Notes: generated by a model not told the origin, from the letters alone. Positions 5,658-49,268 are shown, numbered from the stretch's first letter. The stretch is 64,000 nt of DNA from Neoechinorhynchus agilis (GCA_051530055.1 CM121341.1:10146784-10210783), one strand, 5' to 3'. Translations and numbers: made by a program.

Positions 5658-5858
5658 AGAATTGTTGTTTAGATGTCTTCATTTAGTAAATAAATTTTTT
5701 TATTAAAGACGTTCTCGTCGGGTTCATCATCAGTTTGTTAGTTATTAAAAGACTTTCAGGAAATAACGAGTAAACTGATGATGAACCAAAAGAGGTTCTC
5801 AGAACGTCTTTAATTCAAAAAATTATTTACCGGGTGAAGACTTTTAAAAAATAATTCT
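5658..5858. repeat. Foldback element family 1 (arms contain CTGATGATGAACC)
   Basis: Imperfect inverted arms of about 75 bp; a second copy lies at 55403-55599. Confidence 0.8.
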
Positions 5859-14356: not shown

Positions 14357-15179
14357 ATGGTTATCGCTGATATTTATCAACGACAAGAACTTTCGGTGAA
14401 AGTGATTTCTTAAACAAGGGAGTTTTAATAAAACAAAAAGTGCACGTTTATTCCGTGTATTTAAAACTTTTGTTAAATGTCTTTGGGTACGAAAATCATA
14501 TCAAGGATCTAAACCGTACTTCAAATAAAATATTTTATACTTAAGAAAACGACTTAAAGAACGAAGCAGGCGTAACTTACGAGCAAGGGAGTTCAGTTAG
14601 CCCTTTCACAGGCTTTCTAGGAGGTGACAAAATTAAGTTTAAAAAAGTAAACACGCAATAAAGTATGATATTCTGAGCAACTATAGAAGTGGATCCATAG
14701 CTCTTCCAAGGTCGGCAGAAAAAACGTTACCAACTCAAAGAAGAAAAATAAATTGCGATTCTCCTAAATTAAAACCATCCTAAAATACGGCCTATAAACT
14801 GAATTTTAAAGACAAGACGCGATCAAACCCGATTTAGGTAAAAATTTAACATAAAGAAGACAAGAGAATCTCTTCTTTAGTCGGTGGAATCAGAATTCAA
14901 AGATACGCGTTTTTTGTGCGATTCAACTACGAAATCACCGGAGGTATTATCACTTATTAGCACAAAGTGGAAAGCCAAAGTGGCAAAAAGGGAAGACACC
15001 CACGCTCACTAAATTAGCAGTTTTCAAGCTCTTTGTGCTCACGGCCCAAACTTGATATCCGATGACGACCAACCACCCTACCTTAGAAAATCAAAATATG
15101 CATAAGAAAAAATGTTATTCCTGTTCTTGGTAAAATTAATTCTATGGTGTGGTTCCAGCAAAAATTAAAAAACCCGACT

Positions 15180-18100
15180 AAGGAAACAATAACTGGGCAC
15201 CTATAGAATCCATGGATATACAATAACAACACATTTTATTTATACAAACAGAGAAACCATGTACCTCTGAGTCCTCGTGAGCATTCGAGTTCTGATTTGT
15301 CAAACCAGTGTGATTGTTTATTTTGAAGAGGAATGCGGCTTTGGCCGGATGAGAATATCCGGTCGGGAGATGTCCGTCGGGGTGGGAATTGGTGCTTATT
15401 GTTTGTGAGAGATTTATTTGATTTTGGTTGGTAAGGCGCTTTGAGTGCTTTTGAAAGATTAGAGAGAGGTGTTCTTCTAGGGGTAGGAGTTCGGAGGAGC
15501 AGATTAGAGCGCACTTCTTGTGCAATGTATTAAGTTTTTTGAATAGATTAGAGGAAAACTTGCAGAAAGTAGGATATGTGCGTAGGTGAGCGTTGGTAGG
15601 ATGGCGGTGTTATAAACGCATTTAAGATCTTTGGATGATAATCCAAGGAATCGGAGGCGCTTAAGAAGATAGAGCTTAATGGACCCTTTGCGCAACGAAA
15701 TTAATAATAACACGTTTTTTTTATCACCACACACCCAAACAAGCACGGGAACTATGTATCTTTGGATTCGTGCTGTTTGATTGGGACTGAATTCGGAATG
15801 AGCTGCAAATCGTCGCGTGTGCATGAGCCTTTCCTCCGATTCAGGCCGTAGATTCATGGGTTGATTGTGCAATGGCAAAAAATGATTTTTTATATAGTGC
15901 GGTGCGAGGGAGAGGCGAATTGAATCTGTTCGGACATCGCGTATTTCGGACGGGTTCCCTTGGCGAGATGAACGGGAGAAATTTGAATAGAAGGGAACGC
16001 AGGGAGGTCATGTATTTGTCGAAGATTTTGGAAAGGTGTTCTTCGATTGGTGGGAGGTCCTTGGAGCAAATTTTGCAAGCTCGTTTATTTAGAGAGGAAA
16101 GCAAGCGCAGTTGATGGGTGGATAAATTGCAAAAGGTTGGATATGCATATGAGATTGCAGGGACCACAACGGACCAATAGAAATGTGCTAGATCGCGTGG
16201 GCTGACTCCGAGGCAACGCAAGCGCTTGATTAAATGCAATTTAGCAGTGGCTTTTGTTACGATGGCATTAATGTGAATGTCCATTTGAGGTTGTGTTGGA
16301 AGATTAGACCCAGAATGCGAAGCGATGTGACGCGTTGGATATCGAGAGGGAGCGGTGGAATATCAGTCCTAGGTTTTCGAAGCGACAGTGGTGGAAAAAT
16401 ATTTAAGATTTTCAATCTCTGCGGACGTGAGGCTGAGCGAGAGTGATGGAGGAGCATGGGTTATGATGGTTAGGTCGTCCGCATAAAAGAAATATTTGGC
16501 GGACGTTGAGAGGAGTGTAAGGTCGTTGAGGAAAATATCGAAAAGTAAGGGCGATAGTACTGCTCCTTGTGGCACGCCGCAATGTATGGGAAGCGTCGTT
16601 GAGTCGATATTTCCGCATTGAAAATATTGCGACCGGTTTGCGAGGAAAGAAGTGGGCCAACTTATTTGCCAGGGTAAGAAGCCAAATTTCTCACAGAGCT
16701 TAAGGAGAAGATTGTGATCTACAGAGTCAAATACCTTGGCAAAATCCACCTGGATGAGGCGACAAACGAAAGACGGTTCTTGGTCAAGATTGCGCAGGAT
16801 CGAATCGCAAATGCACAAGAGGGCGTCGGTGCAACGGAATCCTGGCCGGAAGCCGAATTGGATCGACGAAATGTTTTGTAAGAAGATGGGGAGGATGCGA
16901 GTTTTGAAACATTTTTATAAATTTTAGAAAACGGCGAGAGTAGAGAGATAGGGCGAAAGGAAGTCATAGAAACGGGTTTACCCGCCTTGGGGATAGGAAT
17001 GACGTGAGCGGTCTTCAGGCAATCTGGAAAAATCCCCGTTTCAAAGCTAGAATTGATGATATGAGCTAGATGCTCAAAGATCAAGGAAATGATGATGCGA
17101 ATGGCCCAGTTGGGAATCGGAGCGTTAGGGGATGATGTACGTGGTAGTTTTTTGAGGAGTAGGAGAACCTCAAGAGAGGAGACGCGTGAATGAGGAACAC
17201 AGGACCTATGGTTGCGATCGTCGCAGGGGAGTACGACGCTCGTGTCAGTGGAAGATTTGGGAGGGCACATGGTAGCGTTCATCGAGTAGAGTGTTTTCGA
17301 GCTGACATTTATACAGATTGGCGAAAGGCTGAGATCTGTGAAGGCCTATGGCATTTTTGATCTCGCTCCACCAGGAACGATTAGGGGGTGACGGTAGTTT
17401 GGAAAAAAGGAAAGTTTTGCGAGCGTGAAGAAGACGCTCAGTGAATCTCTTGTGGAGTTCTGGGTGTGCTTGTCACACTTTAGATTTTCCTGAAAATCAA
17501 GTATACGATTAGAGGAGACACGATTGATAGAGAAAGGAAGAAGTGGCTGATCGGAAGGGCTATTTGAGATTGAGGGGACGATTTCGAAGCACTGCTTGAT
17601 CGTGAGAATTGCCGTTTAAAGTAATTTAGATTGAGAGGGGAGCCGGTGCATGCGCAATGATTGTCAGATCATCAGCATACAGTAAGTATTTAGAATAAGA
17701 AGAGGATGGAAGAAGATCGTTCAGGAAAATGTTGGAAAGAATGAGGGAGAGAACAGCTCCTTGGGGAACTCCCTAGTTGATTGCTAAGGTGCTCGAGGCG
17801 ATGCTCCCTATTGGCGTCCGTACAAGAAGCCCGACCGGAAACGGAATTGAATAAGTGCAATTTTTCGATTGAGGATTGCAGAGGGTGTACCTTAAAGCAT
17901 CTCTGTAAGACTTCAGAGAAGGAAGGTAAGATAGAGATGGAGCAGGGTTACCCGAGCTGTTTTAAGGCAATTAGGAAAGATTCCAGTAATGAAACTTTGG
18001 TTGATTATTGGGGTAAGTGGACCAATAAAATCTGGAATGATAAAGCGTAGAGCCCAGTTGGGAAACGGAGAGTTAGGGGAAGATTTGCGGGTGGTGTAGA

Positions 18101-18969: not shown

Positions 18970-21900
18970 ATGCTCAATTTATTGCGGCGTTTCTGTAGTA
19001 TTGGAAGTTCAGGTTTGATTTGGTCGGGTTTGGCAAGACGAACTTTCACATGAATGCGTTAGAGAGCGAGAGTACACTTTTATCGTTTATTTTAGACACG
19101 ATGAACACGAAATCGGCCTTGCTCACTTTGTTTTCAATACTAGGTTTCAGATTGGCGATGGAGAACGAGAGAGGTTTTAAAAGACTTCCAAAATATATTC
19201 GGCCAATCAATTACGAGTTGACGTTCAGACCTGATCTCGAGAAGCACACATTTGAAGGACACGCTAAAATCAAATTTACCATAGATCATAATGAGCCACT
19301 TAAAGCGTTTGAATTATACTCAAGTGATCTTGATATTCGAAATGTTCTACTTGACCAAATGAACGTCGCTTATTCAGCTGAACCAAAAGAAGAACGAATC
19401 AAAATTGAACCGAAACGTGAACTATCAAGTGGAAACTATACGCTTGATATTGAATTCAGCGGACTTTTGAACGATAAAATGCACGGTTTCTATAGGAGCA
19501 CTTATCAACGAGAAGGAAAACAGTATACGCTTGCATCCACTCAATTCGAACCAGCTTATGCTAGAAAAGCCTTTCCGTGTTGGGATGAACCGAGTTTTAA
19601 AGCTACGTTTGATGTTACTATAGAAGCTCCAAAGGATCTTACACCGATGCTCATATATTCTAATGGCAACGGGGAAAATCGCATGTTTTTTCCAAATTAA
19701 TTTCGAAATTATCATTGATTTCGTTATATCCGTCCACCTCCAGAAAGTTATTGTTGAAAAGAGAAATCGTTCATCTTTTTTTGGTCATTTATAGAGAGAT
19801 TAATTTATTATTATTGATTTCCTTTTTTTCACACAATATTTCGCCCGTCTCATTTGACTTCCTAAGGTCTAAAAGTCTCGACGATACGGTTGAAATATTG
19901 TGTGAAAAAGGGAATCAATAATAGTAAATTAATCTCTCTATAAATGACCAAAAACGAAATAACTTCTTTACAATAATTATTTACCAATTTTTGGGTTTTC
20001 GGTTATCCAAAAAAATCAAGCGACGTTCTCCTATATTGTAAAGAAGTTATTTCGTTTTTGGTCATTTATAAAGATTAATTTATTAGTTCTCTTCTATAAA
20101 CAATATTTCGTCCGTCTCATTTGACTTCCTAAGGTCTAAAACTCTCGACGATACGGACGAAATATTGTGTGAAAAAAGAGAATCAATAATAGTAAATTAA
20201 TCTCTCTCTATAAATGACCAAAAACGAAATAACTTCTTTACAGTAATTCTTTACCAATTTTTGGGTTTTCGGTTATCCTAAAAATATCTCGTATCCGAAT
20301 GGTGCATCAATTAATTTGTGGATAAACGACGTTCTCCTGTATTGTCAATTGAAAACACCACAACTCCGATTCTTGTAAAGCGAAGTTTTTTTGTGGATTT
20401 ATTTCGTTTTTAGTGATATAGAAATTTATTCGCTGTCACACAATATTTCGAGCGTCTCGTCGGACTTCTTCAAGTCTAAAAGGTAGGTCATTAATCCCTA
20501 TATCACCAAAGAAAATTTTTAAAAGTTATCCATTGATTGCTTTTGGTCAGGCGAAGTAAATAAAATTTATAATTTTGGTTAACACAATCCCTTGCCGAAG
20601 GATTTTCTCTGTCGATGATTAATAAAATACCGAAGACAATAAAAGAATTAATCGTATTGAGTAAATTTTCACATCAATCGAATTGCACTGGGGATTTCCT
20701 TATTTGGAAGCAATGGGAATTCAGGATCTCCCATTGTCTAGATTGACTAGAATTCGTTTAGATTAAAGAGCAACGTTTCAATGCATTCTAGTCCCTAAAG
20801 TACGTTCACTTTTTTAAGTCTTAGAAATATGAGCTCATACGGTCCTCTCAAACATGCCGGTTGCCTCTCAGCACAATATATCTGAAACTCTTAAATCCGT
20901 TAATTTCGTCCGTTCTCCAATCATGAGCACATATTTGCTGGCCTTCGTAGTCGGTCCGCTTGAATACATTGAAGGCAAGGACTCAAACGGAGTAGTTGTT
21001 CGTGTTTACACTCCAATCGGAAACTCAAAGCAAGGAGAATTTGCTTTGACTGTCGCATGCAAGACCCTGCCTTACTACGCAGACTATTTTGGAATCACCT
21101 ACCAACTTCCTAAACTTGATCTCGTGGCTGTACCGGATTTCGCTGCTGGAGCAATGGAGAACTGGGGTCTTGTGACCTATAGAGAAACAGCAGTCCTAAT
21201 TGATCCGGACAATAGTGCTGCTTCGACAAAGCAATATGTTGCTTTGGTCGTAGCTCATGAACTGGCTCACCAATGGTTCGGGAACTTGGTTACCATGGAC
21301 TGGTGGACCGATCTTTGGCTAAACGAAGGCTTCGCTTCGTGGATCGAATACTTAGCAGTGGATGCTCTCTTTCCTGAACTTAATATCTGGACGCAGTTTG
21401 TGTTCTTGGATTTAAAAACGGCGCAAAACCTGGACGCTCTCGCCAATAGTCATCCAATTGAAGTAGAAATTGTAAGACCTAACGACGTGGAAGAGATTTT
21501 TGATAGTATCAGTTACAGTAAAGGCGCAACTGTTATTCGTATGCTTCATGACTATCTGGGTGATAAAGCCTTCAAAAAAGGACTTCAATCTTATCTTCAA
21601 AAATTTAAATTTAGAAATGCAGAGACTCGAGATCTATGGATAAGTTTAACTGAGGCGAGCGATGGAATAGACGTAGCTAAATTGATGCATTCGTGGACTA
21701 GCCAAATGGGGTTTCCTTTAGTGAATGTAAAATCCTCAAACCGAATCGACAATGACACAATCAATGTTACTTTGACCCAGTCGCGATACCTTGCCGATGG
21801 TTCTCATGATTCAGAGTATCCTTTGTGGTATGTGCCAATCACTGTATGGTTCTCTGATGAGCGAACCGTACGGTTTCTCCTGACGGAAAGAGAACAGTCG

Positions 21901-23266
21901 TTTCAAGTGAAGGCGCCCCTTGGCGCTTGGTTTAAATTGAACGCGGATTACAGTGGAATGTACGTTACTGCATATCCTCAGGACGTTCTGGAAACACATT
22001 TAGAGAAGGTTGGTACACTCAAGAGTGTGTTGGATCGATTTAATCTTCAAACGGATTTGTTTTCACTTTGTATGTCCGGCGATTATGGGCTGGCTGAATA
22101 TCTGAAGCTCGTGCGAACGCTGGCTACGACTGAAACCGACTTTACAGTCTGGAGGGATATAGAAACAAACATCAATTACATCGGAAATATGATTGGTGAA
22201 ATGGAATATTTATCGCAGTGAATCTGATCGCTAAATTGTCATTTTTATACCAAGACTTTCCGAAAGAGAAGTCAAAAATCATGCATTTGGGCATTCATTT
22301 GTTTTATCTAATGACGAGAAAACATGTTGTTTGTTAAATAATCTAGGAAGAAAAACCTAGAACACTTTGTCGAATTTTGTGATTTGCTGGAATATAGATT
22401 TAGCAAAAACTTTAAAACTTTTTCTTTCATTAAAGTGGTTAGACCCGAATTCCTTGTTTATTTTTACGATCGAATTCACTGCTCTAGATGGTTTAGAAGA
22501 TAAGGAAGTTACGGCAAACTTGGATTGTTTTAAGCAAAATTCATTTGATTACATTTACAAGGAGCTGGGTTTTGTTCGTAAAAACGACAGCGAATCTGAT
22601 TTAACAGCAATGTTGCGTGTTATGATCATAAAGTCATTGGGTCTCTCAGGAGAAGTGGAAGTGATTAAGTTCTGCACGGAGCAGTTCGTTCAGGCAACAC
22701 AATCAGGCGTACATAAACTCGATCCCAATCTCCGACTGGCAATTTATGTAGTAACTGCGTCTCGTCACGGAGTTGAACTATTCGATGATTTTATTCGGTT
22801 ACATCAGAACTGTGAGTTGTCCGAAGAGAAAAATCGATTGTTGGCTGCCATGGGTCAACTAAAAGGTCAAGATGCAAAAGAACGCGTTTTGGAGTACATA
22901 ATGAGTCCAAACGTACGGTACCAAGACGTCATTTATGGATTCCAATCAGTAGCGAATTCAGATCCAATTGGACGGCGGGCCACTTGGAAGTTCTTTATTC
23001 AACATTTTGATGCCATAATGGAGCGGTACAAAGAAAGTTCGATGATGGGATCAATCATTAAACGATCATTCGGATTGTTCTTTGACGACGTAAGTGCAAA
23101 CGAAATCAATGCGTTCTTTAAGGACCATCCCGTTCCAATCGCTGAACGGGCCATTGAGCAAATGATTGAAGGAATCGTAACTAATGGTAAAGTGCTTGAA
23201 CGGAATAGACGATCAATTACTGATTTTCTTAAATCCGTGAGGAGCAATAACAAAGACGAACTTTAA
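18970..23266 (+). CDS. NPEPPS: Puromycin-sensitive M1 aminopeptidase; exons about 18970-19012, 19144-19642, 20841-~22195/22214, ~22483/22497-23266
   Basis: RLPKYIRPINY, TQFEPAYARKAFPCWDEP, GAMENWGL, HELAHQW-18x-E, YSKG. Canonical intron 19013-19143 follows a presequence-like N-terminus MLNLLRRFCS. Confidence 0.95.
19777..20238. repeat. Two foldback elements of family 4 (19777-19954, 20041-20238) inside the NPEPPS intervening sequence; related pieces at 18440-18610 and 20430-20480
   Basis: Arms of about 60 bp TTTTGGTCATTTATAG.../...CTATAAATGACCAAAA around a shared core GACTTCCTAAGGTCTAAAA. Confidence 0.85.
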
Positions 23267-28240: not shown

Positions 28241-29339
28241 ATGCCATTGAACGATCCGTCAAGAAATGTACAAAGCCGAATTGTTGCTAAGACAAATAAT
28301 GGCGATGGTCCAGAAACGGATGAATATCCTCATTCGAAGTTCATTGGTGACGTTAAAGATTATGTAAAATCCGAGCGACTGGGTGAAGGAACTTATGGAG
28401 TTGTTTTTAAAGGACGACATGTTGCGACGAACGAGGTAGTTGCTATAAAAAAAGTAAAATTGGATCCAGATCAGATGAAGATAGAAGGATTCCCAGTTAC
28501 AACTTTGAGAGAAATATCCATTCTTAAGGAACTTCGACACCCAAACATAGTGGCTCTTCACCAAGTTCTCATAAAGGAAAATAATATTTTCCTCGTCTTT
28601 GAATACGTCCCAATGGACCTAAAGAGATATTTAAATTCACTTAAACCAAAAGGAGAACGTGATTTTCTATCTCTGGACCCAGTGTCCCATCGTCAACGGA
28701 TGTACAGAATTTTCTATCAAACTGTCCAGGCAGCCCTCTTCTGCCACTATAGACGCATTATTCATCGAGATTTAAAGCTGCAAAACATTTTGATCAACGA
28801 TTGTGGTCAAGTGAAGCTCGCCGATTTTGGTCTAGCCCGTCCGTTTGAAATACCAATGAAACAATATACACAAGAGATCGTCACTTTGGGGCAGCGGTTG
28901 TGATCTCGGATACGAGTTTTCAATCGCTGCTTTATGGTATAGGTCACCCGAAATTCTATTAGGAACCGATAGATACTCTTGTGCTGTCGATGTATGGAGT
29001 CTCGGATGCATTTTCGCCGAATTGATGTACGGACAACCATTGCTTAATGGAGAATGCGAGATAGGCCAATTGTTGAAAATATTTCAGGCCTTTGGTACGC
29101 CTGATGTCGATACTTGGCCCGAGCTAAGGACAATGGCAAATTTCAATCTACGGTTCCCAAAGTTTCCACCGATGATCGATGAACTCATTGAACCTCTGCG
29201 TTTGGATGAGGCAGGTGAAGATTGCTTAAGGAAAATGCTTGTAGTCAATCCAAGACATCGAATAAGTTCGCGAGCTCTTCTTGAACACCACTGCTTCAAT
29301 GGCGTAGATAAGTCAACATTGCCAGCACGAGATCCATAA
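28241..29339 (+). CDS. CDK1: CDK1/cdc2-like cyclin-dependent kinase with one 46-nt interruption
   Basis: GEGTYGVVFK, VAIKK, PVTTLREISILKEL, HRDLK, LADFGLAR, YTQEIVTL / WYRSPEILLG, DVWSLGCIFAEL. The PSTAIRE helix is divergent, so orthology is tentative. Confidence 0.85.
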
Positions 29340-33058: not shown

Positions 33059-33420
33059 CCCCAAGTAAATGCGGTTCAGAAAAGAAAGCAACATCCGGTT
33101 TCTCCAAAGCGGTCATTGTACATTCCACCACATTCGGTTGTCCTGATAATGCAGCTAACAGTGCATTTGCGAATCGTGCTGCAGCGTAAGCCATCGATAA
33201 AGTCGCCGAACCAGCTTTGGCACTTCAGCCTTCGTGGCTCAATGGATAGAGCGCTGGATTTCTAATCCAGAGGTTGCGGGTTCGATCCCCGCCGGAGGTG
33301 CGCCACGAACTGTGAACGCCGCCAAAATTGATCTCTTGATTTCAACACGACGATTTCTTTTGACAATTTAAGCTTCCGGTGATTTTTAATCTGGGCAGTG
33401 GTGAAATCTACCGAAGACGG
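33059..33420 (-). pseudogene. MDH2: Mitochondrial malate dehydrogenase (MDH2)-like fragment, interrupted and apparently frameshifted
   Basis: Exon 33059-33222 AKAGSATLSMAYAAARFANALL...VVEC...FFSEPHLLG ends in a GTAAGT donor. Upstream pieces are PSSVDFTTAQIK, ITG and INFGG. I did not find the N-terminus or last exon, so pseudogene status is uncertain. Confidence 0.6.
33228..33300 (+). tRNA. tRNA-Arg(UCU)
   Basis: Acceptor stem GCCTTCG/CGGAGGT, D arm TGGCTCAATGGATAGAGC, anticodon arm CTGGA-TT TCT AA-TCCAG, T loop GGTTCGATCC. Confidence 0.92.
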
Positions 33421-33829: not shown

Positions 33830-36740
33830 TCAAAACGACAAGCAAAATCAAGCAGTAAAAACTTACAATAAAATCAATGAACAGTGGACGGGACGCCACT
33901 AAGTATTCCACTCTTGTTGATGTTGCACTAAATGAAGTGCTTTGTACTAGTTGCTGATACTCTAAAAGACTCATTAATTGAAGTGATGGGCACAGTTAAG
34001 GATATATTAGCGGGGCCATTCGGTGCGAAATGGAAGCTCTCAGAAGTTAATAGTTGTTCAAAGTCAAAAAGTACGAAGGTAATAAACCTAATGCTTCAAA
34101 GGGGAAGACAAAGCTTCCAAAGAGGACTTCATAGAAACAAGCTCAACTTTTACAGAAATCGGCTAGTGAAGAGGCCACAAATGAGAATACAGTTTTGGTA
34201 GACTCCACCATTTGTGTCAAACTCAAACGAAGACTTGTTGGAAGCGAGTGGTGTTCAAAAGTATGCGAATACTTCGACAATTATTAGTGATTTGGTAGCA
34301 CCCTTAGAAAATATGCAGCCTGTATTACTTAATGATTCTAAAATTGCTGTGGAAGATTATGATATAAAGACTTCGATAAAAGATAGCGATAGAAAAAATG
34401 AAAGCGATTCACCTTCAATAACTATAAAGAAATCTACGGTTGAACAAAAGGCCGACGAAACATCTTAACGAGTAGGAGGAAAAAAAGCAAAAGAGGGAAC
34501 AAATAAGTATGTAAGGTAGACACCAACGCCATCAAAATCAATCAAACCCCCGATTCATTTCTGTAATGATGCGCCTTCTCCGCCCCCGGCCATCATCCCT
34601 CGCCGCTCTGGATTCGACCCGTCGTGTCATGCACTCCTCCCTCAAGGATATAAATCGCACAACTTTTGTTTGCAACCCCAATCACTCTCATTTCCGTCCC
34701 TATTACCCGAAATCCAAAATTTCCTTCCCACCGTTTTCTACTATAATACTCGTAGCCTCCTTCCTATACTAGATGAAATTTCACTAATTTCATCTACCTC
34801 AAAAGCCGACGTAGTCAGCTTAACAGAAACGTGGTTTACCCCTTTAGCAGCAATTCAGCCATCCTTCCCGGGTACTCTTCCTTCCATACATACCGCGATG
34901 ACCGCCCGGGAGGGGGTCTCAATTTACGTACGGCAGAACTACCTTACTCTTTATCTCTCACAGGTTCTCTTCAAAACCCCACAAATATGGACGCCTACTC
35001 GTCCGCCTCAAAACTCCCTCCCCCGCCGAGAACTCGGACCACTCCTCTGCCCTTATCACTCCCTCCACCCCACCTCTGCGTATGAAATCTCCCCGTTTAC
35101 CCGTCTGGAATTAACGTCATCGCCACATCCACAATTTTATAACATTGTTCAACGCTAACATCCGCATATTCCACTCTGTCAACGTAAATGCCCCTTCCTT
35201 GGCAATGTCCTCCCTAACCTCAATCATAAAAAATTCCCTAGTTTCGGCAATTCCCAAGAAATTCATTAGGATCTCCAACCGCGACCCTCCATAGATAACC
35301 CCATTTTGAAACTTCTACAAAGGCAAGCTTCTAGGGCCCATCGCAATAACTCCCCAGACTCTCCCCGTTTACAAAAAGCACTTACTAACAAAATAGTTAT
35401 CGCCCGCAGAAACTTTTCCTCTAAAATTCGTTCGGGTGGCGATTCAACACTCTTGGTCTACATCATCCGGATATCATCCCCAATGTGTCCTCTTCTGAAC
35501 TAAAACAGGTTCTAGATTTCAGTCTCCGGATAATCTTTAAGGCCGACATCTAAAGCTTTTGTCAACTCGCCGATACTCCAATAAGTTTCGTCACACGAAG
35601 ACAAATTACCTCAAAATTCATCCTCACAATGCGAAATCCCAAACTGGGCTCTTCGTTACCACTCTTTCTCCGAGCCAGCTCCGATTTTGATCTCAACTTG
35701 TTGCAGATCCGCTGGCTCAAATCTTATCTTCACAATCGCAAACAATACATTCAATGCCGTTTCACCTCCTCTATCAGCCTATCCCTCACCAAAGGCGTAC
35801 CTCAAGGTGCTGTTCTGTCACCACTTTTCTTTAATATTTTCCTAAACAACCTCAAACCTTTCTCCTCTCACTCTAAGCTCTTATTATATGCCGACGATAT
35901 CACCCTCATCACCCATTCACCACTAAGTCTCTCCCTTTCTTTAACCCCTAAAGATATTTCTGCACAATCACAAACTCCATCTCAATTTCTCTAAATGCTT
36001 CGAAATGATCCCCTCTCTCCCGCAACCCCACATCATCCCCTGAGTTTCTAAATGGCATCCTACGAGTAACTTCCCTAAGAATTCTGGGTCGCCAATTTCA
36101 ATCAAATTTGAAATGAGACTCGTACATCACTCTCTCCCTCAAGCACAACACCTTTAAAATTTATCTCTTCAAACACCTCCAACATTTAGGAATCGCTTAA
36201 CCCGATCTCAACAACTTTTACTTCTGCTTTATCTTACCATCCCTCACCTACGGTTGTCCCTTATTTTGCACCCTTTTCAAATCGCTAATCCGCCGCCTCG
36301 AAATTCTTCATAGAAGAGCATCTAGAAATTGCCCAGCTAACTTTCCCCCTGTCACCCAATGCCTTGATGCTATTTTGAGAAAACAAACAAAACGCCTCTC
36401 CACCCTACCGCCATAATTTTTTCCACATATCGCACCCTTTTCACACGAGCACAACACTCGTAATTCTAATTCGCTTCACCTTCCTATACCTCGCGCCTCC
36501 CTACACCTAAGCTCCTTTTTTCATGCTGCCCAATCTTCTCGGATATCATAACCTGAAATGAACCAGAGGAAAGACCTACCTTACAAGTGCTCATGCAAGC
36601 AATATCCTCCAATTCCTACCAGAACGGACATACAAAAAAAAGAAAATCTGTGTGTTTATGAGGACCCAAAAGTACATGGGTCTGATTTCTTAAACACAAA
36701 AATCAATAAAACGTGTTATTATTACTCATAAACCCGTCTT
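33830..36740 (+). mobile_element. CR1/L2-like LINE (ORF1-like piece, APE endonuclease, RT), degraded; same family as 15180-18200
   Basis: SLTETW, RDDRPGGG, GVPQGAVLSPLFFNIFLN, LLYADD; shared 3' sequence GAGGACCCAAA(A/G)GTACAT. Confidence 0.8.
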
Positions 36741-36779
36741 GCTATTGCAACAAACTCGTTTTTTGGCTGGCCCAAAAAT

Positions 36780-37480
36780 CATTTAGGTTCTTAACTACCG
36801 TGGTCAATAAATATTGTCTTTTAGCAGAAATTTCCTACTTCTCCAATCAGAACGATTTCATATCCTTTTAATTGCTGAGGACGAAGCCCATCGAGGCCAT
36901 GGTCAAAGCCGTGGGCGAAGGAGGATATGGCCATTCTCAGTTCAACTGTCGAAGTGGAGTGTCTTTGAGAGCTCCCCGAACATCTCCATCGGCGCGTTTT
37001 GAAGATACGCACTCAGCAAGCGGTCTCGTAGATGTTCGATGGCAGTTAGTCTCATTTGTACGTTGTTTGGGATCCTCCTCTGTTAAACGACGAATGCTCA
37101 AGAAACTTTCCTCAAAGGATACGAGGCGTCTTTTGATTACCGCAGTGAGGGACTTCTCCGAACTGTCGTCAGCGGAAAGCAAAGAGAGGTGTCCAAGAGG
37201 ACTCTGAATTTTGCTCGAAGCAGTCCAGCAGAAGGGTGGTGAATCATTTAGCTACTAGATATCGTGCTCCCTTTGGGATCAGTTTCAGAATGTTGCTGGG
37301 AAGAACACGCACGAGATCATGAGCGGAAGGAAGACTGTCGGCGTCATCGGGAAACGTCGACGGATTTACTGGTGTTGCCGGTTGAAGCGATCGCGGGATT
37401 TGACCGGATCCCCAACAACGTGATTTGACGGGCCCATGAATGCGCAACCCCCCAGTTTCGTGAACTTTTGAACTCATTGG
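36780..37480 (-). mobile_element. CRE-clade element, N-terminal ORF remnant
   Basis: LKLIPKGARY and SLTAVIKRRLVSF...DGDVRGAL are homologous to ORF 43737-44327. Confidence 0.7.
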
Positions 37481-37769
37481 TTGCTATGATGGAACTGAGT
37501 GATCAAAAATACTCAGCTGAATGCCAATCTTATTCCAAAATTAAAAAATTGCCTCATAGTTTTGCACTAGTTCACATTAGATAATTTATCAAAATGGGCT
37601 ATTTGAAAAACTATCAAACTTGTTGATTTGATCGTCTTTTGCCGGAAATCCTTTTTTAATATTAAGCCTCCATTTTTTTCTATGTATATCGTTAGTCAGT
37701 CTTCGAAAACTTAATCCGAAACGCTCGTACCTCTCCATACCTACGCTCCTTCTTCCATGCTGCCCCCTG

Positions 37770-37875
37770 CAACAAAATATCTCGCTCGCAGTATAACGAG
37801 GCAATGCTGCTAGCGTGATAGCGACAGCCGAGGAAGGAGAGAAGCTCTAATTTTGCGAACGGTGGTGATTGCAAT
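37770..37875 (+). mobile_element. CRE-clade extreme 3' end fragment
   Basis: CAAAATATCTCGCTCGCAGTA...GGTGGTGATTGCA is shared with the other copies. Confidence 0.8.
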
Positions 37876-38019
37876 GAACCCGTTCGTTGGGTTGTCGTCG
37901 TGCACCAACAGAGACGAGCTACTCTTGAGCGATTTGACAGGACCGCTCGTGTTCATCTTTGCGTTTGCGTTTGAAGACTTGAAATGAATCTGAGGAGAAA
38001 CAAGCGCTTCTGCAAGCAA

Positions 38020-38290
38020 TAAACACTAATGCCTACCAGAACGGACCTTCCCACCCAACCGGATATTCTCAAACGAACGGACACATCCTCACCCGAACGA
38101 ACCGTCCCCGGATAGATAGTTCCCACCCGAATAGGCATCCCTCCGACGTGATATTACCTTTCGAACGGACATCCCCCGACTGGATATTCCCATATTAACG
38201 GATACGCTTTTCTTTTTTTGAACCATTATGAACTTGAATGCTTATGAGGACCCAAAGGTACATGAGTCATCCTGTTCCTTCTCTACAAAT
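38020..38290 (+). repeat. Dispersed LINE-3'/SINE-like repeat with CCGAACGGAC-type internal motifs
   Basis: Related sequence at about 4280-4400, 15250-15390 (reverse) and 36570-36700, each with GGACCCAAAGGTACAT or a close variant. Confidence 0.55.
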
Positions 38291-38879
38291 GGGATGCCCA
38301 CATTTCATTTACACTCTCTAAAACAAACCCTCGTCTTTAGCTCTTCAAACTCGTCCGGCGTCTCGGCGTTTCCCCTAAACGCCTTGCCCACTTTTATCTT
38401 TCTGCCATCCTTCTTATCCTTAAATACGCCTTCCCCACTTTTCTCGCCCTTTCCACCAATGCTCTCCATTCCCTCGAAACCTTGCACAAGAGAGCAGCGA
38501 GAATATGCGGGACTTCACTCCCTCCCCTCGACGCCCACCTCCATTTGCTCCAAAAACGCCCTCCGTCTTCTTCAACCCCCTCCACAATTTTCTTCTTTCA
38601 TCTCTAAATACTCTTCCCTAGTAAACACCCGGAACCCAACCTTTTTCATCCCCCCTCGCTCGTACCACCCTCTACCAAAAATCTTTCTTCCCTCAAGCCC
38701 GATCTTTAATTAATAACCGGAGAACAAGGAAAGACTCCTAATCTGTCATTCTCCTGTAAAACTCCTTCAAAGACAAATCCCACTTCCCTGCCTTAACATC
38801 CGACATCCAGACAACTTCAGCAAAGATAGATGCTGGCAAGTGTATGAATCGTTTTTCTTATTCAATAAAACGTGTTTGT

Positions 38880-40100
38880 TGAACAATAAACGTGTTATTA
38901 TATTATAGGATAATGCGGATAGATCTTAGATTGCAATGCCTGCTGATCGTTTCTTGCTATGCCCCACAAGCCGAACTCACGCAGCAGGAGAAAGACCAGT
39001 TCTGGGAAGATCTATATGATGTGGTCCATGAAATCAAGGAGGAAAGATATATAATATGTGGAGATCTCAACGGTCTTGTTGGCGCGGAAAACTCGAGCTT
39101 GTGTCAAGCACACGGTGGAAGAGGCTTTGGAACCCGAAATTTAGAGAAAGCATTTTGGATTTTGCTTTACCAAATAAACTTCGGATCACGAACACTTACT
39201 TTAAGAAAGAAGAACGCCAATTTGTGACTTACAGCACCGGCGGCAGGAGGAAAATCGCAAATCGATTATATCCTCTATCCACAAGAAAAATGGAGAGGAA
39301 TGAAAAACGCAAAAACTATACCTGGAGAGACTTAGCTTTGGAACACCGTTTACTGTGCATAGACCTCTAGATCAAGAACATCAAACGGCCCAAATAAAGG
39401 ATGCCTAATAAAACCAAATTGTGGCGACTTGATCAAACTCCATAATTGTGAAGAATTCAAGAAGCATGTCATCAGCATTCTAAATCACGACATTGAGGAT
39501 ACGAATAGATGCTGGATTAAATCGGCAGAGAAATCCTTGGATAAAACCACAGGTAGAAAATTACCGAAACAAGAAACATGGCGGTGGAGCGACGAGATGC
39601 AAAGGGCGATAGCGGACAAAAAGTGCGAAAAAGAAAATGGATGCAATATATGAGAAATCGAGAAATATAGCAAAGAAAGCGGTGGCGATAGGGAAGCAAG
39701 AGGCAAATTCGAACTTCTATTCAAAGCTGCAAAAAGACAAAACAATGTCATATGTGTTTATAGTGATGAAGATCAGAGATCAGGGACCTAAGGACATTAC
39801 GACGGTAAAGAAAATTAAGAACAAGGATGGGAACATTTTGAACGAAGAAAAAGAAGTTAAAGAAAAGTGGAGAGAATACTTCAATCAACTGCTGAACAGT
39901 ACGAATGGAGCAGAAAGAGTGCACGAACCTGACGAAGGATTAATCAACGCAATATCAGAGGTCGAAGATAAAACCGCACTTTCCAAGATGAAAACCAATA
40001 TAGATCTGGAAAGTGCTTGAAGCTGATGCTGTTCCACTATTAACAAATCTCTTCCAACGAATACTTACTACTGAAAAGATGTCCGACGAATAGAGGCAGT
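38880..40100 (+). mobile_element. RTE-clade non-LTR retrotransposon remnant (APE and pre-RT region)
   Basis: VSCYAPQ...EKDQFWEDL...ICGDLNG; ITNTYFKKEERQFVTYSTGG; ETWRWSDE; VKEKWREYFNQLLN. Confidence 0.85.
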
Positions 40101-40629
40101 GAGCATTGGTTCCGATATAGCTATCGAGGAAAAAATGTTGATCCACACGATGAAGCAATACAATGGGACAAAACAATGTCTGTTCACTTTCGGTGAGAAT
40201 AATCCCGGTCATTACATATTTTATTTATTCGAAATATTTCGCGAGGTATCCTCGCCTCTTCAATCATCTAAAAATAGGTTTTTCCAAGGAATCCCATAAC
40301 CCGATCTCTACAAATTTCACTTCTGCTTTATCTTATCATCCGTCACCGCTGCCCTTTCACACGAGCACAACACTCGTAATTCATTTAACAACAACGCGTT
40401 TTATTAATGAACAAAAAAAGCGGAACCGTGAACATCTGAGTCCTGACCAGTCAACTTTGAATTTGTTGTTATTGTTTGCGGGCGACTCGAAGGTTTCTTT
40501 GTGCATTATTAAGAAATGAACGTGTTGTCATTGAGGGAGCAGCAAATTGGCGCATTCAATTTAAGTGCCATTTCGGAACTTTGCATGCGCGCGGGAATAA
40601 TCGTTAGCTCTCTGTGCGCCGCTGGAAAC

Positions 40630-40709
40630 TGGCAGCGGTGGGATTCGAACCCACGCCCTTTCGGACCAGTGCCTTAAACTGGCGCCTTAGACCGCTCGGC
40701 CACGCTACC
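40630..40709 (-). tRNA. tRNA-Leu(AAG)
   Basis: GGTAGCGTGGCCGAGCGGTCTAAGGCG; anticodon arm CCAGT-TT AAG GC-ACTGG; long variable arm; GGTTCGAATCC; GCTGCCA end. Confidence 0.95.
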
Positions 40710-41689: not shown

Positions 41690-44600
41690 ATCTTTTATTT
41701 ACAAAACTCACAGCAAATCAAGTCTCATGTATCTACGAGCTTCCCAGATCCATCTCTTTACCATTCGGAACCGTCGCAAGGACACTTGCAGCGTTGCCGC
41801 GCTGGATCATGTTTTGCAGGAAGAACGTTCCTGCTCTTGGGTCTCCGGTTGCGATCCTCATCTTCCTTGAAAGATCCGCCGTAAAGTTTTTGGCCTCAGC
41901 ACCGAGCGTCTCAACGCCGAAAGGGACGAAGTGATGCGCCCTCAAGAGCTCCGCGTACTTCCCGCGCTTGCGTTCCTCTGCGGCAATTGCAGCACCTCCT
42001 TCGCGCCTTGAGGGGACAGGAAAAGGGTGTCCACCCCAGAGAAGGGATTTCCTTTCTGGCCACGGGAACACAGTTATCTCGTCCGGTCTCCGACCGTCGA
42101 GTCTGCAGAGGTGACTCGGTTCGAGCAGATTCGGTGCGTGTATCGTGTTTAAGGCCCCCACCGGACTGGCGACAGACGAGACCGTGTCTACCCAAAGAAT
42201 CCACAAGGGCCCCACAACGACAGTAGTGTGGGACACAAATCGGGAGACCTAGTCGTAAGGACACTCCGATCTTTACTGTTTCGTCCGACAGTAAATTTCC
42301 GATCGAAGGAATCGGAACTGCGTTCAGCCAGGCACCGGATTCCTTCGAGGAGACCGCCAACAATCGAGCTCGGGTCACCTCATCACGCGCGTCAGAAAGC
42401 ATTGAGTTGCGAACTCGCGTGATTAAAGGTTTATCCCAAACTGACTGTCTCTTGCCTCTCAAAGTAACTTCATCGCACTGCGTAATGCAACAAAATTCGA
42501 AGACCGCCTCTTTAAAATTTTCATCAAGTAAAAACTCTTTTTCGAGCAATTTAGCTACCAACTTTCGGCTGCTCTCATAGGAACCTAAAAAGGCCGGAAT
42601 CGCAACATCGGATGTTTTACGAATACCCAAACCGCCGGAAGATACAGGCAAGGAAGCTTGTCTCCATGCCTCATCCGACAGTTGAATATTTGAAATCCCT
42701 TCGAGACACCTCCTTAAATTATCATCAATTTTCGTCAAGGAGTGATGATGTTTGAAGAAGGGCGCTGTACGCAACTTGTACAGCAACTTCGGAAGGAACA
42801 GGGCACTCTTTATTAAAAATAATGCCTGATGGGATGGAAGTTCCCTCGTACGCTCGTAGAGCAATTCGACTCTCGGCGCTATTTGGAGGATCTCCTGAGG
42901 TATATTTTCATTAAAAACGCAACTACCCAGAAGAGACGGTATGTTAGGTGCTAGCTGCGTAAAGCTGTTGAGGATCTCAGTTTGACTAGCGGCGTTTTCT
43001 GCATTCATCACAAACAGCTCACATTTCGAGGTATTAAGCTCAACGCCGAGCTTGGCAGCTTCCCGCATGACGACCTCCAAATCTCGCAACACCACGGAGG
43101 GAGACTCACCGAGTGTTGCGTTGTCCAAATACCAAGCATTAAACTTGGATTTGAGCGAATGAGCGATCGGCCCGATGATATGGTCGTTAAAAACAAGAGG
43201 AGTCTCAGTCCCACAGGCGTTGAGGAAATACTGGTATGCGTCCGATGCGTAAGTTGCGACAGCTTCTAGGGGCACACTGCGATCAACACAGTTGAAGGCG
43301 TTTCGGAAGTCGCATTTGAGCACAACACAGGACTCTGAACTGCTTGTGACAAAAGAGCGAAGTGCGTGCACGACAGCTTCGGCTCCGCAAGGCGTACAGC
43401 AACCCAGTTGTACCAAGCGGAAAAGTTCGCCGAGATCCACTGCAAGACGTTTGCAAAGAATCTTTGCTGCAAGACGCCGAAGTATAGACCCTATAGCGAT
43501 GGAACGTATCCCACCGTCTTTCTTTTTAAGGGCACAGATTGAAGCGCCGAAAAACAATTGAATTGCGACGGGAGGCAATTCGTCACCAACGAACAGATCA
43601 ACGAGGCGAGTCAATCTATTCGAAAGGCTCTGAGCGGCTTCACCCACGGAACAAGGACAACATATCCTAGAGGTGTTGAGGCCTAAGCCCGTCTAGCCCA
43701 TGACCGGATCCACTAGCAAGGCAGCGATTGGGAAAGTTATGAGCTTTGGCGCTTCCGATGGATGATGCTTTTGTTCAGGGTTTCGAGAGTTTCCTCGCTA
43801 ACCTGGGCAAATACTTCCGAGGAGAAGAGGATGCGAACAGCTCCCCGGATATCAACATCCGAAATTTTCGAGGAGGCGCGTTCCCCTATGGATCTAGCAG
43901 GAAACGTACCGTGTGTGGGGTGTTCTGTAGGTCCGCGATCGGCAGCTCGAATTGCGTCCGTAAAGAGTTGATCGAAGGAGGCGATTCTTTCTTTGATTGA
44001 ACTGACCAACGACCCCTCCGAACGGTCACCAGTGCGAAGAACCAGCCTGGGAAAAGCGAAGAGACCTGTCCATGCAATGTCAGACCCGTTTTCTAAGCAA
44101 TCCCTTAACAAAGCACTAAATGACTTCGTCATCTGATACCGAGCGCTCTTTGGGATCCGTTTCAGGGCGTTACTGCGCAGAACGCGCAAGATATCAGGGA
44201 ATTTCGTGGGAATGACCTGAGGCGCTGGGACATTCCGAGGAGGTAGTGGGTTCGGGATGACAGATCTTGGGGGGCGGGAGGAACCAGAACAGCGGGATCT
44301 GAAGGGATCGTGTATCCGAACTAACAAGGATTTGTTAAGGCAAAAACAACCACCGCATTCCGAACAAAAACCTTTCGGGAAGAGATGTCCTGGAGGTTTG
44401 ATAACTCGGCCTGTTGTTGTAAAGCCGTTGCGTCATCATCATCATTGAACTCGACGTCGTCCGGTTGTCGTGTGATGGGCACAGGTTGATGACGCCACAG
44501 TCGGCACGGCAGAATCCGAGAGGTCAACGTTCCGCTGCATTGTGTAAAGAAAGACCTCAAAAAAGACCGGTCGAGACAACACAACGAATTCTCAGCTAGC
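41690..44600 (-). mobile_element. Near full-length CRE-clade RLE retrotransposon (N-terminal CxxC..H finger, RT, CCHC knuckle, PD-(D/E)xK endonuclease)
   Basis: CSECGGCFC...RIH; ALKKKDGGIRSIAIG, DFRNAFN, WYLDN (a deletion removed the QGDP block); CRCGALVDSLGRHGLVC; RPDEITVFPW; AATAAA and A-rich tail near 41680-41705. Confidence 0.88.
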
Positions 44601-48175: not shown

Positions 48176-49268
48176 TCAATTCTGGGAGTTCACTTGTTCA
48201 AAGTAGAACTTTGCTTTCTCAGGATGTGGAATAATCGAATTTGAGCCCGGTTTCCAGTTCGCAGGACACACGTGACCGTTTTTCTGAACGAATTGGAGCG
48301 CATCGAGCACTCGCATCGCCTCTTCGGTTGATCGACCAATATCCGAATCGTTCATCGTGATTTGTCTTACCAATCCTCGTGGATCAATCAGAAAAGATGC
48401 TCTGTGGAGAAGATGGCGGTCGAAGGTGATCTTCGTCGAATTCTTAACTGATTTCTACTAAAATGCATAAATGATAATCCAGACTGTCGTGCAACTATTA
48501 CTCGAAAATTAAATTTTAGAAAAACGTGCAGCAAAAAAGGAAATCACCAAACGTTTTATTCTATATACGAATTATTTGATGTGATTAATGCAAGATAAAC
48601 TGAAGTTTAATAGTAAATTGTTTGAATTATTAGGTTTTTTTGGAACAGTTTACAACCAGCAAAAAGCCTTCACAACATTTAATGAGCTAGATGCTCACAA
48701 TTTAAAATTCAGATTGTTTCGTCAAAGGCTCCAGTAGTAAAGTGTTAAAACGAAAATAATACTTATCCTTTAGATTACTCAAAAAATTAATTGGAAGCAA
48801 TGGAAGGTAATAATCGTATTTAAAATCTTATGAAGAATCGCAATGACCCTTAAAAAGTGGCGAAATTCAATGATTTTAAAAAACCGCCACCCTTTTCATA
48901 AAAGCAATTCCATTTTCCTCATCAAGAACTCCATATCTCCTAGATATTTCCATGTTTTTATCAGCAAGTAAAGGTATTTCTAAATTTCCGAGTCCGCCTT
49001 CACGTTGTGAACGCTTGGTCCATGCGAGATGGCTGAATTTACTATCAGTTGAAATGGCGACGATCTCGCAATTTTTAACTCTAAAGTCAGCTGCTTTATA
49101 ATTGAAGGCCAGAATTTCCGTTGGACAGACGAAGCTGAAATCAAGAGGATAGAACAACAGCAGAAGGTATTTTCCTTCATATTTTTCAAGATTTATTTTT
49201 GAAAAGGTTCCATTGAGGACGGCATCAGCTTCGAATCTTGGAGCAGCCTTTGATAGTAGTGTTTGCAT
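48176..49268 (-). CDS. PRDX: Typical 2-Cys peroxiredoxin; two coding blocks
   Basis: FYPLDFSFVCPTE, DSKFSHLAW, RASFLIDPRGLVRQIT, GRST, HVCPANW. Confidence 0.95.

What the first reader, a model, noticed from the sequence alone, without database searches (positions are those of the whole stretch)
28884..28942. CDK1: a 46-nt hairpin splits the invariant VTLWYR motif
Seen: GTC ACT TT[GGG GCAGCGGTTG tgatCTCGgataCGAGtttt CAATCGCTGC TTT]A TGG TAT AGG. Removing 28888-28933, or any register within the CTTT direct repeat, restores VTLWYRSPE exactly. The removed piece is a nearly complete hairpin whose ends are GG..TT, TG..TT, TT..GC or CT..TG. The only local GT-AG option (28897-28942, also 46 nt) gives VTLGQRSPE and destroys W and Y of the P+1 loop, although TGG TAT are perfectly conserved in the DNA and the rest of the kinase is intact. 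This is the cleanest test case for the system.
Basis: partly seen in the sequence, partly recalled or inferred. Interest (0 to 1): 0.88.

Follow-up and report, generated by a model that had tools for sequence, protein, structure and literature searches.

The report
Hairpin-closed non-canonical intron in CDK1
A 46-base hairpin sits inside the most conserved motif of the only CDK1 gene of a thorny-headed worm, and it looks like the smallest of a class of transposon-like introns without the usual GT-AG ends, a kind so far reported in animals only from larvacean tunicates and one that breaks automatic gene annotation.

Summary
The window is Neoechinorhynchus agilis (Acanthocephala) chromosome CM121341.1. 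An otherwise intact, single-exon CDK1 gene (28241-29339) carries a 46-nt insert flanked by a CTTT direct repeat. The insert folds into the most stable short hairpin in the window (-30 kcal/mol, z -6).

- Removing it in any of six registers restores VTLWYRSPE, identical to human CDK1.
- The public annotation instead uses GT-AG 28897-28942 and gives VTLGQRSPE.
- The Pomphorhynchus laevis ortholog is intronless and uninterrupted at this site.

The "system" is real in this window.
- The peroxiredoxin gene needs a 496-nt AT..AC intron.
- The puromycin-sensitive aminopeptidase gene needs a 1198-nt intron with no GT/GC-AG or AT-AC solution at all.
- Both have ends that pair as strongly as the CDK1 hairpin (z about -4.5).
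- Nine homology-checked GT-AG introns mostly do not (eight have z about 0; one reaches -2.1).

Best explanation (0.6): a transposon-derived, helix-closed non-canonical intron removed from the pre-mRNA, as in euglenids, Amoebophrya and Fritillaria.

No transcript data could be reached. Use of the GT-AG site, DNA-level excision or a null allele therefore remain open. I found no report of such introns in acanthocephalans.

The parts
28241..28887 (+). CDK1 exon 1, from the ATG to ...GTC ACT TT
   Evidence: ORF listing and translation. Best solved relative is human CDK1.
28884..28887 (+). Left copy of the CTTT direct repeat
   Evidence: Read directly. It makes the excision register ambiguous.
28888..28933 (+). 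The 46-nt hairpin insert in one of six equivalent registers. It is the proposed non-canonical intron: 52% GC and five G.U pairs.
   Evidence: Fold -30 kcal/mol, z -5.95. The antisense strand folds to only -16.2. End-to-end duplex -30.6, z -6.8. No other copy in the window.
28930..28933 (+). Right copy of the CTTT direct repeat
28934..29339 (+). CDK1 exon 2, from A TGG TAT AGG to the stop codon
28897..28942 (+). GT-AG alternative used by the public annotation (protein KAL7676124.1, VTLGQRSPE). The donor GTTGTG lies inside the stem.
   Evidence: P0001 sequence. Enumeration of canonical options.
48404..48899 (-). Peroxiredoxin intron, 496 nt, AT..AC (or TG..CA), with a 1-nt direct repeat. Its ends form a helix that continues into the exons.
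   Evidence: The spliced product is a 198-aa 2-Cys peroxiredoxin, gap-free against PDB 5jly across GIAF|RASFLID. It is the only length-neutral option. End duplex -26.0, z -4.5.
19644..20841 (+). Puromycin-sensitive aminopeptidase (NPEPPS) intron 1, 1198 nt, ends CC..CG, AC..AC, AC..AT and others, with a TAC direct repeat. Terminal helix of about 21 bp. MITEs are nested inside.
   Evidence: Junction APKDLT|VLSNMPV is gap-free against P. laevis and five other orthologs. There are zero in-frame GT/GC-AG or AT-AC options within 75 nt of either end. End duplex -22.6, z -4.4. P. laevis has no intron at this position.
22196..22487 (+). NPEPPS intron 2, GT-AG, 292 nt, with an inverted repeat just inside both ends. 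A canonical comparison case, also lineage-specific.
   Evidence: The P. laevis alignment favours the GT-AG junction NMI|DGLEDK. End duplex -16.5, z -2.1. P. laevis has no intron at this position.

Best explanation
The 46-nt insert is the smallest member seen here of a class of lineage-specific, transposon-like intervening sequences in N. agilis protein-coding genes. Each has a short direct repeat at its borders and inverted-repeat ends. In the transcript those ends form a helix that places the two junctions side by side. Each must be removed exactly at the foot of that helix for the conserved protein to be made.

I propose that removal happens on the pre-mRNA by non-canonical, structure-assisted splicing. 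The result would be ...ACT TT(A/G) TGG TAT..., that is, a normal CDK1.

Shown:
- the insert, its repeat and its helix;
- exact restoration of the motif on removal;
- its absence from the P. laevis ortholog;
- two further helix-closed introns without GT-AG ends in the same window;
- weak or no end pairing in the nine checked GT-AG introns.

Inferred:
- that removal is at the RNA level;
- that the helix guides it;
- which machinery acts (a tolerant spliceosome or a separate enzyme).
For: 1. Exact excision restores VTLWYRSPE and a 350-aa ORF. That product is gap-free and identical to human CDK1 over the motif.

2. This was the only N. agilis protein among the best 120 CDK1-like hits, so a functional product is expected.

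3. The hairpin is exceptional: -30 kcal/mol, z -5.95, the strongest in the window.

4. All five G/A differences between the two arms give G.U pairs in the sense RNA and none gives A.C. The sense strand folds at -30 and the antisense at -16.2. This fits selection on the transcript's structure. It does not fit use of the GT at 28897, which is buried in the stem.

5. The GT-AG alternative has the donor GTTGTG, with T at +3. All 14 GT-AG donors read here have a purine at +3 (nine homology-checked, five read by eye). The insert is 52% GC, against 21-33% for the short GT-AG introns.

6. The same anatomy occurs in two other conserved genes.
- PRDX needs a 496-nt AT..AC intron.
- NPEPPS needs a 1198-nt intron with no canonical solution at all.
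- Their end duplexes are -26.0 and -22.6 kcal/mol (z -4.5 and -4.4). Eight Syf1 GT-AG introns give -5 to -13 (z about 0).

7. The insertions are lineage-specific, as reported for non-canonical introns of Fritillaria (PMC11282704).

8. With the intron taken as 28889-28934, CAG falls at +4..+6 and CTG at -8..-6. This is the euglenid nonconventional-intron signature (PMC12501133; PMC11282704).
Against: - No transcript, peptide or read evidence could be reached.
- In 64 kb the CDK1 element is a single copy with no relatives.
- PRDX and NPEPPS intron 1 each have a register with A as first base and C as last. That end pair is tolerated by spliceosomes (PMC13326754). CDK1 has no such register, so it may not be handled the same way.
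- The PRDX and NPEPPS helices are equally stable on both strands. That would also fit plain transposon inverted repeats.
- Canonical introns of 34-49 nt exist here, so a 46-nt GT-AG intron is not odd in size.
- The CAG/CTG match is absent from the other two introns and was found after trying registers.
- The G.U argument rests on five positions, three of them at the border.
Confidence: 0.6

Rival explanations
1. The spliceosome uses GT 28897 and AG 28942, as in the public annotation. The worm's CDK1 then carries Gly-Gln in place of Trp-Tyr, and the hairpin is a recent insertion rescued by a cryptic 46-nt intron.
For: It is in frame and length-neutral. The public annotation chose it; that annotation was made with BRAKER and RNA-seq hints (paper). 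Canonical introns of 34-49 nt are common in this genome. NPEPPS intron 2 shows that an inverted-repeat insertion can be spliced from nearby GT-AG sites.
Against: - It destroys two residues of the CMGC-kinase motif, which are aromatic even in P. laevis (YY) and WY in the 73%-identical relative P0002.
- The TGG TAT codons are still intact and in frame.
- The donor GTTGTG has T at +3, unlike 14 of 14 GT-AG donors read here.
- The donor is paired inside a -30 kcal/mol stem.
- The gene predictor cannot propose non-canonical sites, so its choice is not evidence of use.
Confidence: 0.15
2. The insert is a disruptive insertion allele, or the gene is a very young pseudogene, or (least likely) it is an assembly error. 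By chance it became the consensus of an assembly made from pooled worms.
For: The assembly is a MaSuRCA hybrid of Illumina and Nanopore reads from about 50 pooled worms plus single females (PMC12690905). The element is single-copy in the window. A hairpin between direct repeats is a typical insertion footprint and is prone to slippage.
Against: - Both flanking reading frames are fully intact (213 and 133 codons).
- No second CDK1 of N. agilis was seen.
- A lethal allele should be rare in a pool.
- Two other housekeeping genes within 30 kb carry the same kind of interruption. That is not credible for null alleles.
- The insert matches nothing nearby that could indicate a templated artefact.
Confidence: 0.1
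3. The helix-ended sequences are germline-restricted DNA, excised precisely from somatic chromosomes like ciliate internal eliminated sequences. Somatic genes would then be uninterrupted.
For: Direct repeats plus inverted ends and a need for exact removal also describe eliminated sequences. The PRDX and NPEPPS helices are strand-symmetric. The DNA came from whole worms rich in germline tissue.
Against: - I know of no report of programmed DNA elimination in acanthocephalans (own knowledge; not specifically searched).
- The direct repeats differ in length and sequence (CTTT, TAC, A).
- The CDK1 helix is much better in the sense RNA than in the antisense.
- The closest known analogues are all RNA-level.
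Confidence: 0.07
4. The insert stays in the mRNA and ribosomes hop over it: take-off at UUG 28886-28888 and landing at UUA 28932-28934. This would resemble phage T4 gene 60 or the mitochondrial bypass elements of Magnusiomyces.
For: There are synonymous Leu codons 46 nt apart, a hairpin starts at the take-off site, and a stop codon lies five codons downstream of the take-off codon. The comparison with gene 60 rests on my own knowledge.
Against: Such bypassing is not established for cytosolic ribosomes of animals. It cannot deal with the 496-nt and 1198-nt interruptions of the same anatomy.
Confidence: 0.01

Closest known systems
Nonconventional introns of euglenids (Euglena)
   Same: - Non-GT-AG borders.
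- Base pairing that brings the intron ends together.
- Repeats resembling target-site duplications at the junctions.
- Sizes from tens to thousands of nucleotides.
- Coexistence with conventional introns (PMC11282704; PMC3935182 abstract).
- The CDK1 element even matches CAG at +4..+6 and CTG at -8..-6 in one register (PMC12501133).
   Different: - An animal, not a protist.
- Helices here are 14-21 bp, not a few pairs.
- The CAG/CTG signature is absent from the PRDX and NPEPPS introns.
- They are a minority of introns here (about 3 of roughly 17), not about 70%.
- Circular excision products and late removal are untested.
Introner elements among the non-canonical introns of Amoebophrya (parasitic dinoflagellate)
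   Same: Inverted repeats of 8-20 nt at the two ends form a hairpin. Direct repeats of 3-5 nt overlap the exon-intron borders. Splice dinucleotides are variable. Both are parasites with compact genomes (PMC7789003). This is the closest match in anatomy.
   Different: There they form repeated families and make up a large share of introns, and U1 snRNA was not detected. Here no second copy of any element was seen in 64 kb, and ordinary GTAAGT donors dominate.
MITE-derived non-canonical introns of the tunicate Fritillaria borealis
   Same: An animal. Inverted-repeat ends. Species-specific positions that suggest recent gain. The introns are often preceded by exonic TAC (PMC11282704), and NPEPPS intron 1 here is preceded by, and ends with, TAC. 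Terminal A...C pairs are possible for PRDX and NPEPPS (PMC13326754).
   Different: In Fritillaria more than 90% of introns are non-canonical, mostly AG-AC or AG-AT, and they are removed by a modified U2 spliceosome. Here GT-AG dominates, the ends differ, and CDK1 has no A...C register.
Transposons spliced out of exons through cryptic sites (maize Ds/dSpm, C. elegans Tc1)
   Same: An inverted-repeat insertion in coding sequence is removed from the mRNA. This comparison rests on my own knowledge of the older literature.
   Different: Those removals are imprecise and usually leave altered proteins. Here exact restoration is needed, and the sequence allows it.

Membership tests
Canonical U2-type GT-AG (or GC-AG) intron | GT or GC at the 5' end and AG at the 3' end, at the junction required by the protein | tested here: not met
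   None of the six motif-restoring registers has these ends. All in-frame canonical options alter VTLWYR.
Canonical U2-type GT-AG (or GC-AG) intron | Donor resembling the species' consensus (GTRAGT), and AT-rich intron composition | tested here: not met
   The candidate donor GTTGTG has T at +3, while 14 of 14 GT-AG donors read here have a purine (and others). GC content is 52% against 21-33% for the short GT-AG introns.
U12-type AT-AC intron | 5' /ATATCCTT and a TCCTTAAC branch site | tested here: not met
   CDK1 has no AT..AC register. PRDX is AT..AC, but its 5' end is ATGAAAAG.
Euglenid nonconventional intron | Non-canonical borders, with pairing of the two intron ends | tested here: met
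Euglenid nonconventional intron | CAG at +4..+6 and CTG at -8..-6 | tested here: inconclusive
   Met for CDK1 only in register 28889-28934. Not met for PRDX or NPEPPS intron 1.
Euglenid nonconventional intron | Excised as a full-length circle, after the conventional introns, by unknown machinery | not testable with these tools
   This needs RNA data.
Amoebophrya-type introner element | Terminal inverted repeats of 8-20 nt plus a direct repeat of 3-5 nt overlapping the borders | tested here: met
   CDK1: 10-14 nt arms and CTTT. NPEPPS: TAC. PRDX has only a 1-nt repeat.
Amoebophrya-type introner element | Belongs to a repeated family | tested here: not met
   No second copy in the window and no similarity between the ends of the three introns. 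The whole genome could not be searched.
MITE (non-autonomous DNA transposon) | Terminal inverted repeats, a target-site duplication of fixed length, and many copies | tested here: inconclusive
   Inverted repeats and a flanking repeat are present. The repeat length differs among the three introns (4, 3 and 1 nt), and no copies were found in 64 kb. True palindromic MITE families do exist in the window.
IRE1/XBP1-type or tRNA-type (bulge-helix-bulge) mRNA splicing | Cleavage sites in 7-nt loops of twin hairpins, or in 3-nt bulges spaced by a 4-bp helix | tested here: not met
   The predicted structure is one continuous stem with a 1x1 internal loop at its foot. The motif definitions are from my own knowledge.
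Ciliate-like internal eliminated sequence | Absent from somatic DNA | not testable with these tools
   This needs read-level DNA data from separate tissues.

The most novel reading that the evidence does not exclude
Acanthocephalans have independently evolved a helix-guided pathway that excises transposon-derived sequences from nuclear pre-mRNAs without GT-AG signals, as in euglenids, and possibly without the spliceosome. It would be common enough that essential genes such as CDK1 depend on it. Part of the reported massive 'gene loss' in these parasites would then be an annotation artefact.
Probability: 0.25. Interest if true: 0.9.

Novelty: new variant of a known kind. Interest (0 to 1): 0.72.

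Why it matters
1. If confirmed, this would be a second, independent animal lineage with inverted-repeat, non-GT-AG introns. It would be the first in Spiralia, and its anatomy is closest to euglenid and Amoebophrya introns, whose removal machinery is still unknown. A 46-nt element in an essential gene is a compact substrate for finding that machinery.

2. It affects published conclusions.
- The public annotation mis-translates CDK1.
- It splits NPEPPS into three genes at or near the two introns.
- It splits a TTC27-like gene into two genes; whether that intron is non-canonical is ambiguous.
- No N. agilis peroxiredoxin turned up in the protein search, which may also reflect gaps in the database.
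- The genome papers report only 47% complete metazoan BUSCOs and read this as gene loss. They never mention introns or splicing.

3. It shows intron gain by insertion in a 46-Mb parasite genome. In NPEPPS none of the P. laevis introns is retained, while two new ones were gained.

4. A parasite-specific RNA-processing step on which CDK1 depends would be a conceivable antiparasitic target.

Tried and rejected
- Strong hairpins elsewhere in the window. Apart from CDK1, none splits a host gene's coding sequence: they lie in decayed retroelements, a tRNA gene or non-coding DNA, or lie in frame within an ORF. The one at 16817-16872 is plain reverse-transcriptase coding sequence next to a frameshift.
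- Four brute-force screens for 'hairpin or end-helix whose removal fuses ORFs' (one search timed out). They were swamped by false positives in multi-frame-open retroelement DNA, so I dropped them in favour of homology-defined junctions.
- Templated-insertion origin. No significant match of the insert to nearby sequence on either strand.
- Other copies of the arms. Only chance-level 10-mers.
- Shared ends among the three non-canonical introns. None found.
- TTC27-like gene as a fourth case. Homology asks for 61040-61224 (GC..AT or AC..GC). A GC-AG intron at 61045-61226 costs only one extra residue, and the end pairing is at chance level. I left it as ambiguous.
- NPEPPS intron 2 as a hairpin-foot excision. 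The P. laevis alignment favours the GT-AG junction.
- Rfam. Only two tRNAs in the window.
- Exact look-ups of guessed CISD and PRDX products found nothing.
- A uniform rule for where the junctions sit relative to the helix (blunt, or a 2-nt stagger as in euglenids). Each intron has registers that fit, but the choice is after the fact and the outer pairs of NPEPPS do not fit.

Full report
**Where the window comes from**

The CDK1-like protein obtained by removing the insert matches, at 99% identity over 350 aa, one NCBI protein: KAL7676124.1, 'hypothetical protein ACOME3_002381 [Neoechinorhynchus agilis]'. That gene lies on CM121341.1 of assembly GCA_051530055.1. N. agilis is an acanthocephalan fish parasite. 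Its genome is 46 Mb and was assembled from Illumina and Nanopore reads of about 50 pooled worms plus single females. It was annotated with BRAKER using RNA-seq hints. It has only 47% complete metazoan BUSCOs, which the authors read as gene loss (PMC12690905; PMC12256650). Neither paper mentions introns or splicing.

**The observation**

The gene at 28241-29339 is one open reading frame apart from a 46-nt insert.
- CTTT occurs at 28884-28887 and again at 28930-28933.
- Removing 46 nt in any of six registers (starts at 28884 to 28889) gives one 350-aa ORF that reads ...YTQEIVTLWYRSPEILLG....
- The best solved relative is human CDK1 (334.8 bits; CDK2 scores 293). The alignment is gap-free and VTLWYRSPE is identical.
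- The insert with its flanks folds into a 14-bp stem plus an inner stem: -30 kcal/mol, z -5.95. It is the most stable 56-nt window in the 64 kb.
- The public protein reads VTLGQRSPE, so the annotators used GT 28897 and AG 28942.
- Other in-frame canonical pairs exist. None restores VTLWYR.

**Age and origin**

- The P. laevis ortholog (50% identical, VTLYYRAPE) is a single uninterrupted 1050-nt ORF.
- A 73%-identical relative of unknown source has VTLWYRAPE.
- The insert is therefore specific to the N. agilis lineage.
- It has no second copy in the window and no nearby template.

**Is there a 'system'?**

I built gene models from homology.

Ordinary introns:
- The Syf1/XAB2 gene (54128-58859) is solved completely by eight GT-AG introns of 651, 43, 402, 83, 47, 659, 278 and 34 nt. 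They give an 844-aa ORF colinear with human SYF1.
- A SMAD gene just beyond the window has a 49-nt GTGAGT..TCTAG intron that restores KGWGSQYKRQTITSTPCW.
- Further GT-AG introns, read by eye and not checked against homologs, lie in DHDDS (34 nt) and importin-13 (36 nt).
- Ordinary, often very short, GT-AG introns are therefore the rule. All 14 donors read here have a purine at +3.

Two conserved genes cannot be solved that way:
- The 2-Cys peroxiredoxin on the minus strand needs exon 1 (49268-48900) joined to exon 2 (48403-48176). The 198-aa product then aligns without a gap across GIAF|RASFLID. The 496-nt intron is AT..AC (or TG..CA) with the 5' end ATGAAAAG, which is not U12-like. Every GT-AG option adds or removes residues in that block.
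- The puromycin-sensitive aminopeptidase (NPEPPS) needs removal of 19644-20841, which is 1198 nt with a TAC direct repeat. The junction APKDLT|VLSNMPV is gap-free against P. laevis and five other orthologs. There is no in-frame GT/GC-AG or AT-AC pair within 75 nt of either end. The public annotation splits this gene into three.

**The shared hallmark**

Pairing between the first and last 30 nt (plus 8 nt of exon on each side) separates the classes:

| Intron | End duplex (kcal/mol) | z |
|---|---|---|
| CDK1 insert | -30.6 | -6.8 |
| PRDX | -26.0 | -4.5 |
| NPEPPS intron 1 | -22.6 | -4.4 |
| Eight Syf1 GT-AG introns | -5 to -13 | +1.4 to -0.3 |
| NPEPPS intron 2 (GT-AG, inverted repeat just inside its ends) | -16.5 | -2.1 |

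- In all three non-canonical cases the helix runs through or right up to the junctions, and in PRDX and CDK1 it continues into the exons.
- Neither NPEPPS intron position has an intron in P. laevis. None of the P. laevis introns is present in N. agilis.
- The ends of the three introns share no sequence.

**Bearing on CDK1**

Because N. agilis must remove helix-ended, non-GT-AG sequences from at least two housekeeping genes, the same treatment of the CDK1 hairpin is the most economical reading. Three further points favour it over the annotated GT-AG:
- The donor GTTGTG is atypical and is paired inside the stem.
- The insert is 52% GC, against 21-33% for the short GT-AG introns.
- The five G/A differences between the arms all give G.U pairs in the sense RNA. 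The sense strand folds at -30 and the antisense at -16.2 kcal/mol. This suggests the transcript's helix is kept.

Cautions:
- PRDX and NPEPPS each have a register with A first and C last. That end pair is tolerated by spliceosomes (PMC13326754). CDK1 has none.
- Their helices are strand-symmetric.
- The euglenid-like CAG(+4..+6)/CTG(-8..-6) match of CDK1 holds in one register only and is not shared by the other two.
- No N. agilis transcript-derived protein is in the searchable collections. The mRNA could not be checked.

**Comparison with what is known**

- The anatomy matches the introner elements of Amoebophrya: 8-20 nt inverted repeats and 3-5 nt direct repeats at the borders (PMC7789003).
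- It also matches euglenid nonconventional introns: end pairing, repeats like target-site duplications, any length, unknown machinery, circular products (PMC11282704).
- It shares lineage-specific positions and the exonic TAC with the MITE-derived introns of Fritillaria.
- It fails the tests for GT-AG, U12, XBP1-type and tRNA-type introns.
- Literature searches found no report of non-canonical introns in acanthocephalans.

**Verdict**

The best explanation is a transposon-derived, helix-closed non-canonical intron removed from the pre-mRNA (0.6).

Rivals:
- GT-AG use (0.15);
- insertion allele, young pseudogene or artefact (0.10);
- somatic DNA excision (0.07);
- ribosomal bypass (0.01).

The decisive test is cheap: map the existing RNA-seq and single-worm DNA reads across three junctions.

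Noticed in passing
window 58083-58116, about 46150 (- strand), about 11391-11426; L005 14029-14077: Ultra-short canonical GT-AG introns of 34-49 nt. They fall in Syf1, DHDDS and importin-13, and in a SMAD gene where the 49-nt intron sits inside the conserved KGWG..RRQT..STPCW motif.
   Followed up: partly
window 5721-5787, 55469-55531, 62844-62857: A palindromic MITE family of about 115 bp with arms ..ATTAAAGACGTTCTC..TCATCATCAGTTTG... One copy lies inside Syf1 intron 3. Perfect or near-perfect hairpins are about seven times more frequent than in shuffled sequence (11 against about 1.6).
   Followed up: partly
window 54689-54900 and 19780-20250: A foldback element of about 215 bp inside Syf1 intron 1. 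Nested inverted-repeat elements lie inside the 1198-nt NPEPPS intron.
   Followed up: no
window 19101-23266, 60086-62439, 53538-53840: The public annotation splits NPEPPS into three genes and a TTC27-like gene into two. It calls a 100-aa ORF antisense to an intact two-CDGSH (CISD-like) gene instead of that gene.
   Followed up: partly
window 61040-61226: The TTC27-like intron. Homology with seven orthologs asks for 61040-61224 (GC..AT, or AC..GC). A GC-AG intron at 61045-61226 would add one residue. End pairing is at chance level, so this is an ambiguous fourth candidate.
   Followed up: yes
window 48176-49268 (- strand): No N. agilis protein appeared among the peroxiredoxin hits; the best was 57% identical. 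The gene may be missing from the public proteome, but the annotated NPEPPS fragments also failed to appear in their search, so the database may simply be incomplete.
   Followed up: partly
window 15000-17300 (-), 41700-44300 (-), 1-2000, 34600-40500: Decayed non-LTR retroelement copies with frameshifted reverse-transcriptase ORFs. They account for most other strong hairpins and for the GC-skew excursions.
   Followed up: partly
window 33228-33301 (+), 40630-40709 (-): tRNA-Arg(TCT) and tRNA-Leu(AAG) genes.
   Followed up: no
L004 (P. laevis NPEPPS locus) compared with window 19020-23266: Complete turnover of intron positions between the two acanthocephalans. None of the P. laevis introns (about 11 to 12) is present in N. 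agilis, and both N. agilis introns are new.
   Followed up: partly
window 54010-54128: The first Syf1 coding exon lies upstream of an acceptor at 54127 and close to the divergently oriented CISD-like gene. I did not resolve its start codon; the public model begins at 54010.
   Followed up: no
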